Positions 4,992 to 23,520 of a stretch of 64,000 nt of DNA are shown here, piece by piece (position 1 is the stretch's first letter; the number at the start of each line of letters is the position of its first letter). The notes under the pieces are model-generated. The model saw nothing but the letters and a program-made list of their open reading frames with translations, ran no database searches and had not been told where the DNA came from. Both the position numbers and the translations under genes were made by a program. The DNA is taken from the sequence record NC_031126.1; one strand, given 5' to 3'.

Positions 4992-5001
4992 GGAGAATCA
5001 A

Positions 5002-5367
5002 ATGAATATTTTAGAAACTATAGGTAAGTACGCAGCAGATTTTAATAACCCAGGTGTGATGTTAGTCTTCGTGCCACGCGATCTGAATATGGATGCCGCT
5101 GGCCCACAAAAGCCTGGTGTTTTTGATGCGACCGGCGATAGTCGTTTCGACTGTACACGCCTGCGTAATATTCGTGCGGAGGCAGTGGAGACTAACCAGC
5201 TCCGCATACTGTTTATCGCTTCTGGTACCGGTGGGTCTTTGTTGGAGAACGAAGTCGATGTGTCATTATCGGTAGAATTCGGAATGACTAGCGGCTGGGT
5301 AAAAGTCCAGAAATTCCGTTCCGTTGCTGAGAAACCAAAAGACACGGTATTCATCTACGAGGCGTAA
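5002..5367 (+). CDS. Hypothetical protein
   Basis: Start reassigned to ATG 5002 behind an AAGGAG RBS. Confidence 0.7.
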   Translation: MNILETIGKYAADFNNPGVMLVFVPRDLNMDAAGPQKPGVFDATGDSRFDCTRLRNIRAEAVETNQLRILFIASGTGGSLLENEVDVSLSVEFGMTSGWVKVQKFRSVAEKPKDTVFIYEA

Positions 5368-17853: not shown

Positions 17854-18303
17854 ATGAATAACTTGACGTTTTCCCCATCTGTTGGCTTGCTGTTAAACGG
17901 CAAACGTATCGACTCTACCTTTAACCATCACTGGCAGGTGTTGGTGAAGCGTCTGGGTGAGAAAGCCCGTATTGTTGTTACGAACGAAATCAATCTGAAT
18001 GCGAATGTGGAGAAGTGCGGTCAGATGTTTGCCTTCCACATCCCACGCACGACCGGTAAGGCGCTGCTCAAGCACGGTGAGTTCACTAGCCGAGTTAGTA
18101 GCTGGCGTATGCTTGGGGCGCTGTCTAAGGCCGCTGAGCGTCCTGTATCGCAGGGTATGGCACCAACCTTATTAGAGGACGGTGTGATTAGCATCCTGGT
18201 TTACCGTTCTAATGAAGATAACGAGCTGTCGTACATGATCAGCTATGCTCACGCCGCCGTTCGTTTGGAAGATGCGCTCGAGGAGATTGAACATGCCGGA
18301 TAA
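17854..18303 (+). CDS. Hypothetical protein
   Basis: 149 aa, first gene after the terminator/promoter. Confidence 0.7.
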   Translation: MNNLTFSPSVGLLLNGKRIDSTFNHHWQVLVKRLGEKARIVVTNEINLNANVEKCGQMFAFHIPRTTGKALLKHGEFTSRVSSWRMLGALSKAAERPVSQGMAPTLLEDGVISILVYRSNEDNELSYMISYAHAAVRLEDALEEIEHAG

Positions 18304-19204
18304 AATTCATCCGACTCTAATTCAGTTCCAGCGTCTACACGCGTGGAATCAAAATGCATTGGTTTATCGACACGGGTCGCTCGACCAGCAATGTTTGAAA
18401 ATATATCGCTACCTCGGCACGCTGGCCGAGGGTGTACAAAAGATGAACGGGTTAGACGTCGCTGCGGGTGCCGGTAATCTACTGGCGAACTTATTTACCT
18501 GCTGTGCGTTCACTGGCATCACTGCTGAGGAGTTTGAGTATCAATTCCAAAGAGATACAACATCCACCCGTTTCGATAAGCAGACGCCTGCAATGCAAGT
18601 GAAACTTTTGGTTGCGGAGACCGTTCGCGCCTTATCGGATTTGAGTCACTGGGATTCGGTAGCCGGTACTCGTTTATCTCGTGCTGTAGCATTAGAGTCC
18701 GTGGGTCTGGTTATCGAGGCGTTAAAAGCGATAGCCAGTAAAGGCGGTTTTTATCTTGACCGCTGTGTGGTGAATGCCGTGACTTCCATCGTTAAGAAAG
18801 AAGGGCAGCTCAATGAATTCGGCCAGTTCGGGTCGGTACCGGAACCGGAAATGATGTTTGTCGATCCGAACGGTAACCCGCCGGTCGTGTCTAAACCTTC
18901 GGGTCAGGCCATTTACCAATACATCATTGTCGCGCTGCGTGGTCGCTTCGAAGAACTCCGCCAGGAAATGGTAGGTGAGGTACTCGGTACATCCCGCATC
19001 GAGAAAGTCGACCGTGAGATAAATCTTCGTCTGGATGACTTGCTCGATAAATACATTCGTGCTGATGACGAGCGCCGTAAAATGCTCTTTGAGCGTGCCC
19101 CACATTTTATCGTCATAGTCGAGCAGGGCGAACTTAACGTTAACGCTAACGAAGACTTGGCGTGGCTATTAGAAGAACTGAAAAAGGATCAACGAAAAAT
19201 ATGA
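18293..19204 (+). CDS. MazG-like paralogue lacking catalytic acidic residues, with extra C-terminal domain
   Basis: AGGAG RBS, ATG at 18293. Ungapped alignment to the MazG core of 22597..23520. Confidence 0.7.
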
Positions 19205-20319
19205 ACCAGTATCTCATCCTCCTAAATCAAGTCCGTCGCGACGGGCATGTAAAGAAAGACCGTACCGGTACCGGTACCACGTCTATTTTCGGTGCACAGA
19301 TGCGCTTCAATCTACAAGACGGCTTCCCATTGGTGACGACCAAGAAGTGCCATCTCCGTTCCATCATTCACGAGCTGTTGTGGTTCCTTAACGGTGACAC
19401 CAATATCAAGTATCTGAACGATAACAATGTCACCATTTGGGACGAATGGGCGCGAGACGAAACTCGCCAGGTTCCGTGCGTTTACACCGTGGAAGAGCGA
19501 GTTGCTATTTTACGCGAGCGTAGTAGTATCGACGGTAAGACTACCGACTGGTACAACGAATGGGAAGCGGGTCTATTAAGTGGTGATGACGATGAAGCGA
19601 AGATGGCGGTACTCGATTCGCAAAACGTGCCGCGCGAAGGATTCCGTGAAGAAACCTTCCATGGTGAGTTAGGGCCTGTGTATGGTAAGCAGTGGCGTGA
19701 TTGGATCGGGCCAGATGGTCAACACCACGACCAAATCAGCACGGTCATCGACCAGCTACGTAATGATCCGGACAGTCGTCGCATTATCGTTAGTGCATGG
19801 AATGTGGGTGAGTTGGATAAAATGGCTTTAGCGCCTTGCCATTCCTTCTTCCAGTTCTACACGCGTGAGTTGTCTTTAGAAGAACGGCTTCTTTATGTTC
19901 ACGACCATGTTGACTTCTACGAAGACTGGGCAGGTTCTGGTCTTACCCAAACCGATGCCGAAGCCTGGCTTGATGCAAACAATATGCCTAAGCGCGAGCT
20001 TTCCTGTCAGCTGTATCAGCGTAGCGCTGATATGTTTTTAGGCGTGCCGTTCAACATTGCATCATACGCACTACTGATTCACATGGTAGCCCAACAGGTC
20101 AATATGACTGTCGGTGATTTCGTATGGACGGGTGGTGACGTACACATCTACAGCAATCACGAAGAGCAGGTTCGTCTGCAACTGTCTCGTGATCCGCGTC
20201 CTTTACCGAAGTTGAAAATTCTTCGTAAGCCGGACTCTATCTTCGATTACAAGTTCGAAGACTTTGAGCTTACTGGTTACGAACCGCATCCTGCGATAAA
20301 AGCACCGGTGGCGATATGA
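19201..20319 (+). CDS. thyA: Thymidylate synthase with two insertions
   Basis: [42 protein letters not shown] and GDVHIY motifs. Confidence 0.97.
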
Positions 20320-21029: not shown

Positions 21030-21863
21030 ATGACAAACAAACTGTTCTTCTTCACCGATTGCGCTTACTCTGCTCCGATGGCTCCTTATTTCTACGGCGC
21101 TGTGGGTGCCCGTGACCTGGCGCACCTCCACGAACTGCTGGGTACCAATAAGGTTGACTCGGTGGTTCTGGGCGACACCACTTACGAAGGTCAGATTACC
21201 GTGGGGCAGGACTTCCGACAGATTGAAGGTCGTACCTACGATGACCCGCGCAAGACGCAGGTTCCGGTTTATCGTGTGAATGAAGGCGTTGACCTGACCG
21301 AACGTAAAGCAACCCTGGTGAAGTTACTGTGTCAGCAATACGGCTGGACAGAAGAAGCGGTCATCGTCCACATGGACGTAATGGAACGCATTCCAGCAGA
21401 AGCGTCCAGCTCCGGTAAAGAAATGTGGCGTGGTTGGGTTAACGTTGAAGTGCACCCGGATCGACTGCCAATGTTTATCACCTTCGAAGGTGACGATGAT
21501 AAGAACTTCTCCCCGACTGGTGAGATGGTTGAGTACGATTACAAAATCATTGTTGATCGCGAACTGACGCCAATCTGGCATATGGTCGACCTGCTCGAAG
21601 CAAATGAGCTGGAAGAGTTCTTTAGTGAAGCGGCGTACATCTGCCGTAAAGGAACTCTCTCTGACTCTCCGGTAGAAGGCTGGAAAGAAGTCTTTGAAGT
21701 TTACGGCAACCATTCCATTCAGCTGTGGCTGAACCCGGACTGGAAAGCAATTCAGGAAAAGCTGATTGCTGGTCTAAACGAAGAAGTAGAACGCCAACAG
21801 GCGGAAAAAGAAGCGGCGGGTGAAGTTGCTCCTGCTACCGACCTCCCTAACATCGACGAATAA
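21030..21863 (+). CDS. Hypothetical acidic protein
   Basis: 277 aa, abuts the upstream stop. Confidence 0.7.
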   Translation: MTNKLFFFTDCAYSAPMAPYFYGAVGARDLAHLHELLGTNKVDSVVLGDTTYEGQITVGQDFRQIEGRTYDDPRKTQVPVYRVNEGVDLTERKATLVKLLCQQYGWTEEAVIVHMDVMERIPAEASSSGKEMWRGWVNVEVHPDRLPMFITFEGDDDKNFSPTGEMVEYDYKIIVDRELTPIWHMVDLLEANELEEFFSEAAYICRKGTLSDSPVEGWKEVFEVYGNHSIQLWLNPDWKAIQEKLIAGLNEEVERQQAEKEAAGEVAPATDLPNIDE

Positions 21864-21873
21864 GGTAAATACA

Positions 21874-22317
21874 GTGTCTAAGACCCTAATCAATTATGAT
21901 ATCGTGGTGCAAGAGCTGACTAAAAACATGGACAGCATTTCAAGCCAGGCTGTAAGGAACATGGCACCAACTCGTGAAGTCTTCTTGGGTGAATTCCGTA
22001 CGATTCGCTTAGGTGCGGGGCGTCAGAAAGGAATGACTTCCTGGATGTACTCTCAGCTGACAGAAGACACATTGGTTCTAGCCCACGGGCGGTTGTATGG
22101 CTTCATCAAAGATGAATACGCGCAACGCTTCCCTAATGGCCCGAAGGCCACTTTCATGCCCGGCAAGACGTTCCACCAATTTGTCATTACGCGTAAGTGG
22201 AAGAAAGTGTTTGTTGTGGATTCGGGAATTTATTTCTACCACAACAAGTACAATACTTTCTATAAGCGTCTGGCTGATATGGTCGACGACGATGTTGTAA
22301 TTTACATGTTGAACTGA
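21874..22317 (+). CDS. Hypothetical protein with P-loop-like RQxGxT segment
   Basis: AAGGT RBS, GTG at 21874, motif RLGAGRQKGMTSW. Confidence 0.6.
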   Translation: MSKTLINYDIVVQELTKNMDSISSQAVRNMAPTREVFLGEFRTIRLGAGRQKGMTSWMYSQLTEDTLVLAHGRLYGFIKDEYAQRFPNGPKATFMPGKTFHQFVITRKWKKVFVVDSGIYFYHNKYNTFYKRLADMVDDDVVIYMLN

Positions 22318-22324
22318 GGTAGCT

Positions 22325-22534
22325 ATGTCTGGAAAAGATTTATCGAAATATTTGGTTGGGGGCGGCATCGGTCGGGGTCTAACTCCTGCCGGTACGCAAG
22401 AATTAATCAAGCAGCAGAACCCGCTGGATGAATTCGACCTTAGTCATTTAGGTTTAGACGGCGTTACCGTAGAGGGTGGCGTGGATGCTGCGATGGACGA
22501 CGAAAGTTGCCCCTCCGGTGCCTGCAAAATTTAA
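22325..22534 (+). CDS. Small protein ending in an NrdA-type C-terminal redox tail (DDESCPSGACKI)
   Basis: GAGGT RBS at 22316-22320, stop followed by a terminator. 7 of the last 8 residues match E. coli NrdA CESGACKI. Confidence 0.8.
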   Translation: MSGKDLSKYLVGGGIGRGLTPAGTQELIKQQNPLDEFDLSHLGLDGVTVEGGVDAAMDDESCPSGACKI

Positions 22535-22541
22535 CGTATTC

Positions 22542-22580
22542 GGGTGTCCTTATGGACACCCCCTTTTCTTTTCTTTTTTT
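22542..22580 (+). terminator. Intrinsic terminator
   Basis: GGGTGTCC-TTAT-GGACACCC plus long T tract. Confidence 0.9.
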
Positions 22581-22596
22581 CTAACAAGGATTAATC

Positions 22597-23520
22597 ATGA
22601 CCATTGTTAATAGCTTCACTATTCCAGTTAAATACGACATCATCGTTGATGCCAACAAACATTTAAAAGAAGTCAACGAACAGCTGGCTAAAGTACCTGG
22701 CATCTTTGCGAGTCTTGGCGCAGAGAAGGGTTTGCAGTTTGATGTTCTGTACACCGCATGCCGTAACACGGAAACCGGTGACTTCCGTGTTGAAGGCAAA
22801 CCAATTCTGGACAACGCTCGCCTGGACATCATCTCCGTCGAAGTGAAAAACGTCTCGCTAACCGATCCTGTATACTCCGGCGTGCAGACTACGCACCCAC
22901 GCGACATTCCTTTATACAGCATCGACGAATGTGTGAACAAGGTTAAAGGCTGGTCTAAAGAACGCGGTATTCTGGAAAACGGCGTTTGGTATACGCAGGG
23001 TACCAAGCTGTATGAAGAAGACGGCGAAGCAGCAACAGGCGTAGGTAAAAATAAACATCCGCTTATCATGGATGGGGTCGGTGACGCAATTGTGGTACTG
23101 GTCAACCTGATGGAATTGACTGGCTACGATGCTGTAAATATCCCGCGTCTTTTGGGTGAAGCTCGATTAACGTCGGGAACCACCATTCACGGCAACGCCC
23201 ACCGTTTATTCCACAAGATGCGCTATAGCATCACCTGCGCCATTGATCTACTTTGGGATATGGCGGCCGTCGATTCACCGAAGAAACTGAACTTCGATAC
23301 GTTCGATAACGGCACGAAAGAAAGCGTCGAGTTCTACTTCGAAGAAATGTTGGTGTATGCTGACAGCCTGGCTAACGCCTACGACATGACACTGGAGCAA
23401 TGCTTCTCTCTGGCATGGGATGAAATCAAAGACCGTAAAGGTTTCCTGAATGCCGATGGTATCTTTGTGAAAGAAGCTGATATGACCGCTGAGCAGAAAG
23501 CTGCCCAGGGTTCCCTTTAA
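22597..23520 (+). CDS. mazG: MazG-like nucleotide pyrophosphohydrolase (phage type) with N-terminal extension
   Basis: WSKERG..Q..KLYEEDGEAA..IMDGVGD and CFSLAWDEIKDRKG..GIFVKEAD motifs. Confidence 0.82.
   Translation: MTIVNSFTIPVKYDIIVDANKHLKEVNEQLAKVPGIFASLGAEKGLQFDVLYTACRNTETGDFRVEGKPILDNARLDIISVEVKNVSLTDPVYSGVQTTHPRDIPLYSIDECVNKVKGWSKERGILENGVWYTQGTKLYEEDGEAATGVGKNKHPLIMDGVGDAIVVLVNLMELTGYDAVNIPRLLGEARLTSGTTIHGNAHRLFHKMRYSITCAIDLLWDMAAVDSPKKLNFDTFDNGTKESVEFYFEEMLVYADSLANAYDMTLEQCFSLAWDEIKDRKGFLNADGIFVKEADMTAEQKAAQGSL

What the first reader, a model, noticed from the sequence alone, without database searches (positions are those of the whole stretch)
22325..22534. Standalone mimic of the host ribonucleotide reductase (NrdA) redox tail
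Seen: a 69-aa gene with its own GAGGT RBS and a downstream terminator, ending ...AAMDDESCPSGACKI-stop. Established: E. coli class Ia NrdA ends ...DDGCESGACKI, and that flexible CxxxxC pair carries electrons from thioredoxin/glutaredoxin to the active-site disulfide. The acidic run, cysteine spacing, SGACKI and the free C-terminus are all preserved, while the other ~55 aa look unstructured and unlike NrdA. Inference: a trans-acting RNR tail that either speeds re-reduction of host RNR to raise dNTP supply, or acts as a decoy competing for the active site or Trx/Grx. It sits downstream of thyA and just upstream of mazG.
Basis: partly seen in the sequence, partly recalled or inferred. Interest (0 to 1): 0.85.

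Follow-up and report, generated by a model that had tools for sequence, protein, structure and literature searches.

The report
Free-standing copy of RNR redox tail
A giant Erwinia phage that has no ribonucleotide reductase of its own carries a small, disordered, acidic protein whose last dozen residues copy the cysteine-pair tail that recharges the bacterial enzyme; the same unstudied protein family turns up in related phages and in Neisseria and Moraxella chromosomes.

Summary
Window 22325-22534 (+) is gp256 of Erwinia phage vB_EamM_ChrisDB, a 69-aa 'hypothetical protein' with an RBS and a strong terminator hairpin. Its C-terminus matches the last 15 residues of E. coli class Ia NrdA, end to end; a family profile searched against the PDB returns essentially only NrdA tails. 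The gene is under purifying selection and is syntenic in five jumbo-phage genera. Both cysteines are invariant in 63 aligned relatives. ChrisDB and SPN3US encode no RNR, thioredoxin or glutaredoxin.

- A second conserved motif lies upstream of the tail.
- 38-55-aa versions sit in Neisseria, Kingella and Moraxella chromosomes, usually between iscS and iscU.
- In four metagenomic phage relatives the tail is fused in frame to the neighbouring gp254-family protein.

Best reading (about 0.4): a portable dithiol tail, recharged by host thioredoxin or glutaredoxin, that serves host NrdA in trans. Inhibition, or delivery to another acceptor, is not excluded. No function is shown. I found no literature, Pfam or NCBIfam entry for the family.

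The parts
22316..22320 (+). Shine-Dalgarno-like GAGGT, 4 nt before the ATG; overlaps the stop codon of gp255
   Evidence: read directly
22325..22534 (+). gp256 (YP_009292945.1), 69 aa, pI 4.3, exactly 2 Cys; the tail-bearing small protein (stop codon included)
   Evidence: purifying selection pN 0.063 / pS 0.40 against pEa_SNUABM_9; AlphaFold2 mean pLDDT 59.5, largely unstructured
22325..22426 (+). variable N-terminal part (residues 1-34), with length and sequence differences between genera; one predicted short helix at residues 21-31
   Evidence: alignments A1 and A5; this part is missing where the tail is fused to the gp254 family
22427..22486 (+). conserved motif 1 (residues 35-54), acidic/hydrophobic stretch ending in E-G-G-V-D; G52 and D54 invariant in 63 sequences; not found in NrdA
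22487..22531 (+). NrdA-like redox tail (residues 55-69): acidic pair, C62, G65, A66, C67, K68 invariant; last residue I (L in 8 of 74 relatives)
22542..22580 (+). intrinsic-terminator-like hairpin (8 bp stem, 6 G-C pairs, 22542-22561) plus T-rich tract
21030..21863 (+). gp254 (PHROG 10453, unknown function); the family that carries the tail as an in-frame C-terminal fusion in four metagenomic relatives
21874..22317 (+). gp255 (PHROG 2586, unknown); lies between gp254 and the tail gene; absent in the three fusion-bearing relatives whose downstream context is held (L076, L087)
19201..20319 (+). thymidylate synthase (gp251), start of the conserved nucleotide-metabolism block
22597..23520 (+). MazG-like nucleotide pyrophosphohydrolase (gp257), immediately downstream in 11 of the 14 phage genomes inspected (one or two ORFs intervene in the Derbicusvirus loci; none is annotated in the Alexandravirus locus)

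Best explanation
gp256 is a free-standing, portable version of the class Ia RNR alpha-subunit redox tail: a disordered acidic peptide whose C-terminal cysteine pair cycles between dithiol and disulfide. The most likely mechanism has three steps. (1) Host thioredoxin or glutaredoxin reduces the peptide as it reduces the NrdA tail. (2) The reduced peptide enters the active site of host NrdA in trans and reduces the disulfide left after each turnover. (3) This adds capacity to the re-reduction half-cycle and so to dNDP supply, for a 245-kb phage that makes its own dTMP-pathway enzymes but no RNR. The gp254-family neighbour, to which the tail is fused in some relatives, may act as a carrier or docking partner.

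Shown: the sequence copy, its conservation and selection, the absence of a phage RNR, the genomic context, and the fusions. Inferred: every binding and electron-transfer step, and the direction of the effect.
For: Tail identity:
- Family profiles hit essentially only NrdA C-termini in the PDB, end to end.
- One hit is the 25-mer NrdA tail peptide of 1QFN (by my own recollection, the glutaredoxin-1 complex).

Conservation:
- C62, G65, A66, C67 and K68 are invariant in 63 sequences.
- 70 of 74 members have exactly two Cys.
- In the last 8 codons pS = 0.68 against pN = 0.09. Keeping both Cys fits a cycling dithiol better than a one-cysteine trap.
- The same G-A-C-K-I-COOH ending is kept in the peptides and in genuine NrdAs, which argues for the same docking partners.

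Dependence on host RNR:
- No RNR, Trx or Grx is annotated in ChrisDB or SPN3US.
- tblastn with a Shewanella NrdA, NrdB and YfaE finds nothing in ChrisDB, and in SPN3US only the peptide's own tail.

Context:
- The gene is always in the thyA...mazG nucleotide block, next to dCMP deaminase in Alexandravirus.
- Beside a CxxC thioredoxin-family ORF in Moraxella bovoculi.
- Next to a YfbR-like deoxynucleotidase in one Neisseria-type locus.

The established role of the alpha tail (active-site disulfide reduced by the tail pair, which thioredoxin reduces) is stated in PMC11903788.
Against: - No experiment or structure bears on the peptide.
- A tethered tail has a large local-concentration advantage, so a free one may add little unless it is abundant or docked.
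- Most bacterial homologues sit in the isc (Fe-S assembly) operon, not by nrdAB, which points to a role not limited to RNR.
- The recurrent fusion to the gp254 family suggests a phage partner of unknown function. That family has no universally conserved cysteine, so it is not an obvious electron acceptor.
- The same evidence fits a competitive inhibitor equally well at the level of binding.
Confidence: 0.4

Rival explanations
1. Competitive inhibitor or decoy. The free tail occupies the NrdA active site, or soaks up thioredoxin or glutaredoxin, and so lowers RNR activity. This would be a regulator analogous in effect to the small disordered RNR inhibitors of yeast. In bacteria it would be switched on with the isc operon; in phages it would be used to shut down host DNA precursor synthesis or to keep dNTP levels low.
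For: The binding logic is the same as in the best explanation. A small, acidic, disordered protein is the usual make-up of such regulators. Expression inside a stress-responsive operon in Neisseria would suit a brake. Some defence systems are triggered by RNR-driven dNTP rises (bioRxiv 10.64898/2026.10.27.754916), so restraint could pay.
Against: The carriers checked have no RNR of their own yet invest in thyA, DHFR, dTMP kinase and MazG, so blocking the only RNR in the cell looks self-defeating. A pure blocker would not need both cysteines invariant.
Confidence: 0.2
2. Portable thioredoxin/glutaredoxin handle for a different acceptor. The NrdA-type tail is reused as a general reducible shuttle that passes electrons to something other than RNR: a partner bound by the gp254 family in phages, or the IscS/IscU persulfide chemistry in Neisseria.
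For: Four independent in-frame fusions of the tail to the gp254 family, in relatives lacking gp255 where the downstream context is held. At least 11 Neisseria loci have the gene about 70 nt upstream of iscU. One metagenomic ORF joins an IscU N-terminal part to the peptide (P0070; possibly a chimera). A thioredoxin-family neighbour in M. bovoculi.
Against: The gp254 family has no conserved cysteine and no recognisable fold. The peptide occurs without gp254 in Derbicusvirus and Alexandravirus neighbourhoods, in other phage types and in bacteria. Exact retention of the NrdA ending is hard to explain if NrdA is not a partner.
Confidence: 0.25
3. Non-redox role of the Cys pair: for example a metal- or Fe-S-binding acidic peptide, or a secreted or processed peptide whose G-G motif is a double-glycine cleavage site (RiPP-like precursor).
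For: The isc operon context. Acidic composition. A G-G pair inside motif 1. Two radical-SAM genes exist in ChrisDB and SPN3US.
Against: The radical-SAM genes lie about 60 kb away. No peptidase-transporter or maturase lies next to any copy examined. The identity with the NrdA tail would be a coincidence.
Confidence: 0.08
4. Decayed 3' remnant of a lost phage nrdA gene, with no function of its own.
For: Only the likeness of the last 15 residues.
Against: Own start codon, RBS and terminator. pN/pS about 0.16 over the whole gene. Conserved in five genera and beyond. No NrdA similarity upstream at E <= 10.
Confidence: 0.02

Closest known systems
C-terminal redox tail of class Ia RNR alpha (E. coli NrdA residues 747-761; N. 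gonorrhoeae NrdA, 7MDI)
   Same: Exact C-terminal position, acidic pair, C-x4-C spacing and identical G-A-C-K-I ending. Presumably the same partners.
   Different: Not attached to the RNR catalytic barrel. It is a separate 38-120-aa protein, or is fused to an unrelated phage protein. It has its own upstream motif that NrdA lacks.
Small disordered RNR regulators of eukaryotes (Sml1, Spd1, Hug1, Dif1); from my own knowledge, not tested here
   Same: Small, disordered proteins that act on the large RNR subunit. Sml1 is reported to interfere with the function of the R1 C-terminal cysteine pair.
   Different: No sequence relation was found or expected. Those proteins do not copy the tail and carry no cysteine pair. 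They are inhibitors, whereas the direction here is unknown.
Peptide inhibitors copying the RNR beta C-terminus (own knowledge)
   Same: A short copy of a flexible RNR tail acting in trans on alpha.
   Different: They copy the other subunit's tail. A test for beta-tail likeness in this family was negative (hhalign probability 0.5%).
Small acidic accessory proteins of the ISC system (IscX, CyaY); own knowledge
   Same: A small acidic protein encoded within the isc operon in Neisseria.
   Different: No sequence similarity detected. Those are folded proteins without a C-terminal cysteine pair.

Membership tests
Class Ia RNR alpha subunit (NrdA) | Ribonucleotide reductase catalytic barrel and ATP-cone | tested here: not met
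   No Pfam hit for gp256. tblastn with a 762-aa NrdA finds nothing upstream of the tail or anywhere in ChrisDB.
Class Ia RNR alpha subunit (NrdA) | C-terminal C-x4-C pair two residues from the free C-terminus, preceded by acidic residues | tested here: met
   Profile-to-PDB alignments end on the last residue of the NrdA chain. Invariant columns.
Class Ia RNR alpha subunit (NrdA) | Tail is reduced by thioredoxin/glutaredoxin and reduces the active-site disulfide | not testable with these tools
   No complex-prediction or assay tool was available. Only context hints.
Decayed nrdA pseudogene remnant | Residual NrdA similarity upstream and relaxed selection | tested here: not met
   No similarity at E <= 10. 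pN 0.063 against pS 0.40.
RiPP / double-glycine-leader peptide precursor | Adjacent maturase or peptidase-domain transporter | tested here: not met
   None in any of the phage or bacterial neighbourhoods examined.
Small disordered RNR regulators (Sml1-like) | Small, intrinsically disordered | tested here: met
   Mean pLDDT 59.5, pTM 0.23, one 11-residue helix. Family median pI 4.05.
Small disordered RNR regulators (Sml1-like) | Binds the large RNR subunit and changes its activity | not testable with these tools
   No interaction data.
RNR beta C-terminal tail mimic | Similarity of the acidic/aromatic upstream motif to NrdB C-termini | tested here: not met
   hhalign of A1 and A2 against 12 tool-derived NrdB tails: probability 0.5%, 1-2 aligned columns. 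No NrdB chain among the PDB hits.

The most novel reading that the evidence does not exclude
The family is a new class of trans-acting 'redox tails': a detachable module, free or fused to carrier proteins, that bacteria (Neisseria and Moraxella, often under isc control) and RNR-less phages use to couple the thioredoxin/glutaredoxin pool to class Ia RNR. The phages would use it, with the gp254-family protein as adaptor, to take over re-reduction of the host enzyme.
Probability: 0.3. Interest if true: 0.85.

Novelty: new variant of a known kind. Interest (0 to 1): 0.68.

Why it matters
Re-reduction through the alpha tail is half of the class I RNR turnover cycle, and it differs between lineages (PMC11903788). 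A natural, free-standing copy of that tail would show that this half-cycle can be supplied or disturbed in trans. That gives a simple handle on a step that is hard to study in the tethered enzyme. For phage biology, it would explain how nucleus-forming jumbo phages that lack RNR secure or control dNTP supply. The chromosomal copies in Neisseria and Moraxella, mostly inside the Fe-S assembly operon, suggest an unrecognised link between Fe-S status, thiol redox carriers and DNA precursor synthesis. RNR is already under study as a drug target in that genus (PMC8865847, seen).

Tried and rejected
- Single-sequence searches of gp256 against Pfam, NCBIfam and the PDB, and of its last 25 residues against the PDB, found nothing relevant. 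Only profiles recover NrdA.
- PHROGs gives three families of unknown function.
- Six literature searches (tail mimic, tail letters, phage inhibitors of host RNR, ChrisDB, SPN3US, 7MDI) found no description of the family.
- Beta-tail mimicry: NrdB tails taken from 12 fetched loci look alike by eye (acidic residues plus F), but profile-profile comparison is null. Rejected as unsupported.
- gp254 function: only 6 close and 9 distant relatives. AlphaFold2 model poor (pLDDT 59). Foldseek against the PDB gave no hit at E <= 0.001. Profile against PDB sequences gave nothing. Function stays unknown.
- gp255: a Walker-B-like stretch seen by eye, with no Pfam or PDB support.
- Cluster look-up gave no organism names, and one spurious 375-aa thiolase member.
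- Host tracking of the variable tail positions is not informative. Phages of Erwinia amylovora alone show P/A/T/E at the first x and S/G at the second.
- The Erwinia amylovora NrdA itself could not be fetched. E. coli and N. gonorrhoeae (PDB) and 17 gamma- and beta-proteobacterial NrdAs served as comparators.

Slip: while reasoning I wrote from memory an eight-letter piece of the C-terminus of E. coli NrdB. All NrdB comparators used were read from fetched loci.

Full report
WHAT IS THERE. The window is the last 64 kb of Erwinia phage vB_EamM_ChrisDB (NC_031126.1, 244,840 bp, Machinavirus). Window position equals record position minus 180,840. The finding is gp256 (YP_009292945.1), annotated 'hypothetical protein': 22325-22534 (+), 69 aa. 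GAGGT sits 4 nt before the ATG. An 8-bp G+C-rich hairpin followed by a T-rich tract comes 8 nt after the stop (dG -16.4 kcal/mol, z = -4.9). The gene lies in a co-oriented block: a MazG-like gp250, thyA, gp252, gp253, gp254, gp255, gp256, then mazG.

IS THE NrdA LIKENESS REAL. I used no remembered NrdA letters.
- A profile of 16 phage homologues (A1) searched against 177,635 PDB sequences returned, as its top 14 hits (a Nup120 chain at E = 6.2 follows), C-termini of class Ia alpha subunits: E. coli NrdA 747-761 (E = 0.028), the 25-residue NrdA tail peptide of 1QFN, 7MDI and 8VHP. Each alignment ends on the last residue of the NrdA chain, and all but 8VHP on the last profile position.
- A profile built from the bacterial relatives (A2) puts 7MDI first. 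7MDI is N. gonorrhoeae NrdA (PMC11226230).
- gp256 shares 8 of 15 positions with the E. coli tail as printed by the tool, including the last six residues and the cysteine spacing.
- The bare C-x4-C-x2-stop pattern is common by chance (6 in the window, 5.8 expected). The full motif is unique in the window.

A CONSERVED, SELECTED FAMILY.
- tblastn finds syntenic copies in 61 phage records of Machinavirus, Seoulvirus (SPN3US), Erskinevirus, Derbicusvirus and Alexandravirus. Their hosts are Erwinia, Salmonella, Escherichia, Cronobacter and Proteus. Every match runs to residue 69.
- In a 63-sequence alignment G52, D54, C62, G65, A66, C67 and K68 are invariant, and D59 nearly so.
- 70 of 74 members have exactly two cysteines. 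Median pI is 4.05.
- The N-terminal half varies in length and sequence. Residues about 35-54 form a second conserved motif that NrdA lacks.
- Selection is purifying. Against pEa_SNUABM_9, pS = 0.40 and pN = 0.063. Over the last 8 codons in all 13-genome pairs, pS = 0.68 and pN = 0.09.
- AlphaFold2 with 63 sequences gives pLDDT 59.5, pTM 0.23 and one short helix, as expected for a disordered protein.
- Pfam and NCBIfam have no model. PHROGs files it in three families of unknown function.

NO RNR IN THE CARRIERS. The full annotations of ChrisDB and SPN3US list thymidylate synthase, dihydrofolate reductase, thymidylate kinase, MazG and an HD protein, but no RNR, thioredoxin or glutaredoxin. tblastn with a Shewanella NrdA, NrdB and YfaE (read from locus L056) finds nothing in ChrisDB. 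In SPN3US it finds only the peptide's own tail (13 aa). So these phages depend on host NrdAB for ribonucleotide reduction, or on recycled host DNA. The gene is not a decayed nrdA.

The profile search of 5.8 billion proteins gave 85 small proteins. Besides jumbo-phage forms there is a 38-55-aa class with the same two motifs.
- A genome scan placed it in Neisseria (oralis, subflava, flavescens, viridiae, one record labelled meningitidis, and MAGs), Kingella, and Moraxella (bovoculi, cuniculi, bovis). Seventeen of the other hits (one cut by its contig end) were genuine 756-782-aa NrdAs ending in the same tail.
- In at least 11 Neisseria loci the gene lies about 70 nt upstream of iscU and downstream of iscS, inside iscR-iscS-X-iscU-iscA-hscB.
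- Elsewhere it follows mnmG, next to a convergent YfbR-like deoxynucleotidase. In another locus it lies by DUF3079 and HxlR.
- In M. bovoculi it lies between a flavin oxidoreductase and a 106-aa thioredoxin-family ORF with a CxxC site.
- It also occurs in unrelated phage contigs, one with an SU10-type portal.

FUSIONS. In an IMG/VR jumbo contig (L076) and three metagenomic proteins (P0101, P0102 with 27 member sequences, P0103), the gp254-family protein continues in frame into motif 1 plus the tail. In L076 and L087 gp255 is absent and mazG follows directly. L088, which carries P0101, ends 53 bp after the fusion gene, so its downstream context is unknown. The variable N-terminal part of the free peptides is missing in the fusions, so it is dispensable. 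The gp254 family is confined to these phages: 9 relatives among 1.84 billion representatives and 25 phage records. It has no universally conserved cysteine, gave a poor model and has no structural neighbour. The peptide also occurs where no gp254 homologue was detected.

HOW IT MOST LIKELY WORKS. It is established that the alpha-tail cysteine pair reduces the active-site disulfide and is itself reduced by thioredoxin-type proteins (PMC11903788). The peptides and NrdAs keep the same ending, both cysteines and the acidic pair, which argues for the same partners. Two invariant cysteines argue for a cycling dithiol.
- For an RNR-less phage with a nucleotide-metabolism block around the gene, the most economical reading is a trans-acting tail that adds re-reduction capacity to host NrdA (confidence about 0.4).
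- A competitive inhibitor or decoy fits the binding evidence equally, but fits the biology of these phages less well (0.2).
- The isc linkage and the gp254 fusions keep open a shuttle to another acceptor (0.25).
- Metal-binding or processed-peptide roles (0.08) and a dead remnant (0.02) are unlikely.
- None of the binding or electron-transfer steps is shown.

COMPARISON AND NOVELTY. It works like the NrdA tail but is not an NrdA: the catalytic domain is absent. It resembles in kind the small disordered RNR regulators of eukaryotes (my own knowledge), but copies the tail instead of competing with it by another surface. A beta-tail likeness that I suspected by eye was tested and not supported. 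I found no paper, Pfam or NCBIfam entry for the family. I rate it a new variant of a known kind: a detached version of the RNR redox tail.

LIMITS AND A SLIP.
- The Erwinia amylovora NrdA could not be fetched.
- Host tracking of the variable positions is uninformative in this host range.
- Retrieval of bacterial NrdAs was biased by the search pattern.
It was used nowhere.

Noticed in passing
L023-L025, L039, L041, L043, L045-L052 (Neisseria loci); small gene at about 5001-5129 in most: A 42-aa gene with the NrdA-type tail sits about 70 nt upstream of iscU inside the isc operon of many commensal Neisseria. The spacer between iscS and this gene varies from about 80 to 1200 bp.
   Followed up: partly
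L076:9086-10153; P0101, P0102, P0103 (L087:2750-3682, L088:8001-8900): Natural in-frame fusions of the gp254-family protein to motif 1 plus the tail. gp255 is absent in L076 and L087; L088 ends just after the fusion gene. ChrisDB gp254 itself ends in a short acidic stretch that aligns with the start of the fused module.
   Followed up: yes
window 21874-22317 (gp255) and homologues, e.g. L008:1940-2419: Most homologues carry a hydrophobic run followed by D-E-A-G and three F residues near the C-terminus, resembling a Walker B / nucleoside-kinase-type motif. The ChrisDB copy has D-S-G instead. No Pfam or PDB support.
   Followed up: partly
window 18293-19204 (gp250): A second MazG-like protein (PHROG 10269, weak hits to MazG PHROGs) lies directly upstream of thyA, so the block is flanked by two MazG-type genes.
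   Followed up: no
window 19201-20319 (thyA): The thymidylate synthase is 372 aa against a 266-position Pfam model matched end to end, so it carries about 100 residues of insertion. The SPN3US and Asesino copies are about 340 aa.
   Followed up: no
L017:42049-44284 (ChrisDB gp183/gp184); SPN3US gp102/gp103 in L091: A conserved pair of radical-SAM proteins of unknown role next to a DUF4376 protein, about 60 kb from the tail gene. No link to it was found.
   Followed up: partly
L037:4093-5494 (Moraxella bovoculi): The small tail gene lies between an Old-Yellow-Enzyme-type flavin oxidoreductase ORF and a 106-aa thioredoxin-family ORF with a C-G-V-C site. M. bovis keeps the oxidoreductase neighbour but not the thioredoxin.
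   Followed up: partly
P0044, P0076, P0081, P0085 (SPFM-series Salmonella phage records): Four cluster representatives from these records show rearranged or truncated versions of the peptide ORF, probably sequencing or assembly problems. Not analysed.
   Followed up: no
P0070 (878-bp ENA contig): An 89-aa ORF joins an IscU N-terminal part (PF01592) to the small protein. It could be a real fusion or an assembly chimera.
   Followed up: no
P0037-P0040, P0024, P0006 and gp256 residues 16-33: Longer family members share further N-terminal short motifs (an S-L-T-G-D-P stretch and a G-R-G-x-T stretch followed by a predicted helix). These hint at additional docking elements in some lineages.
   Followed up: no
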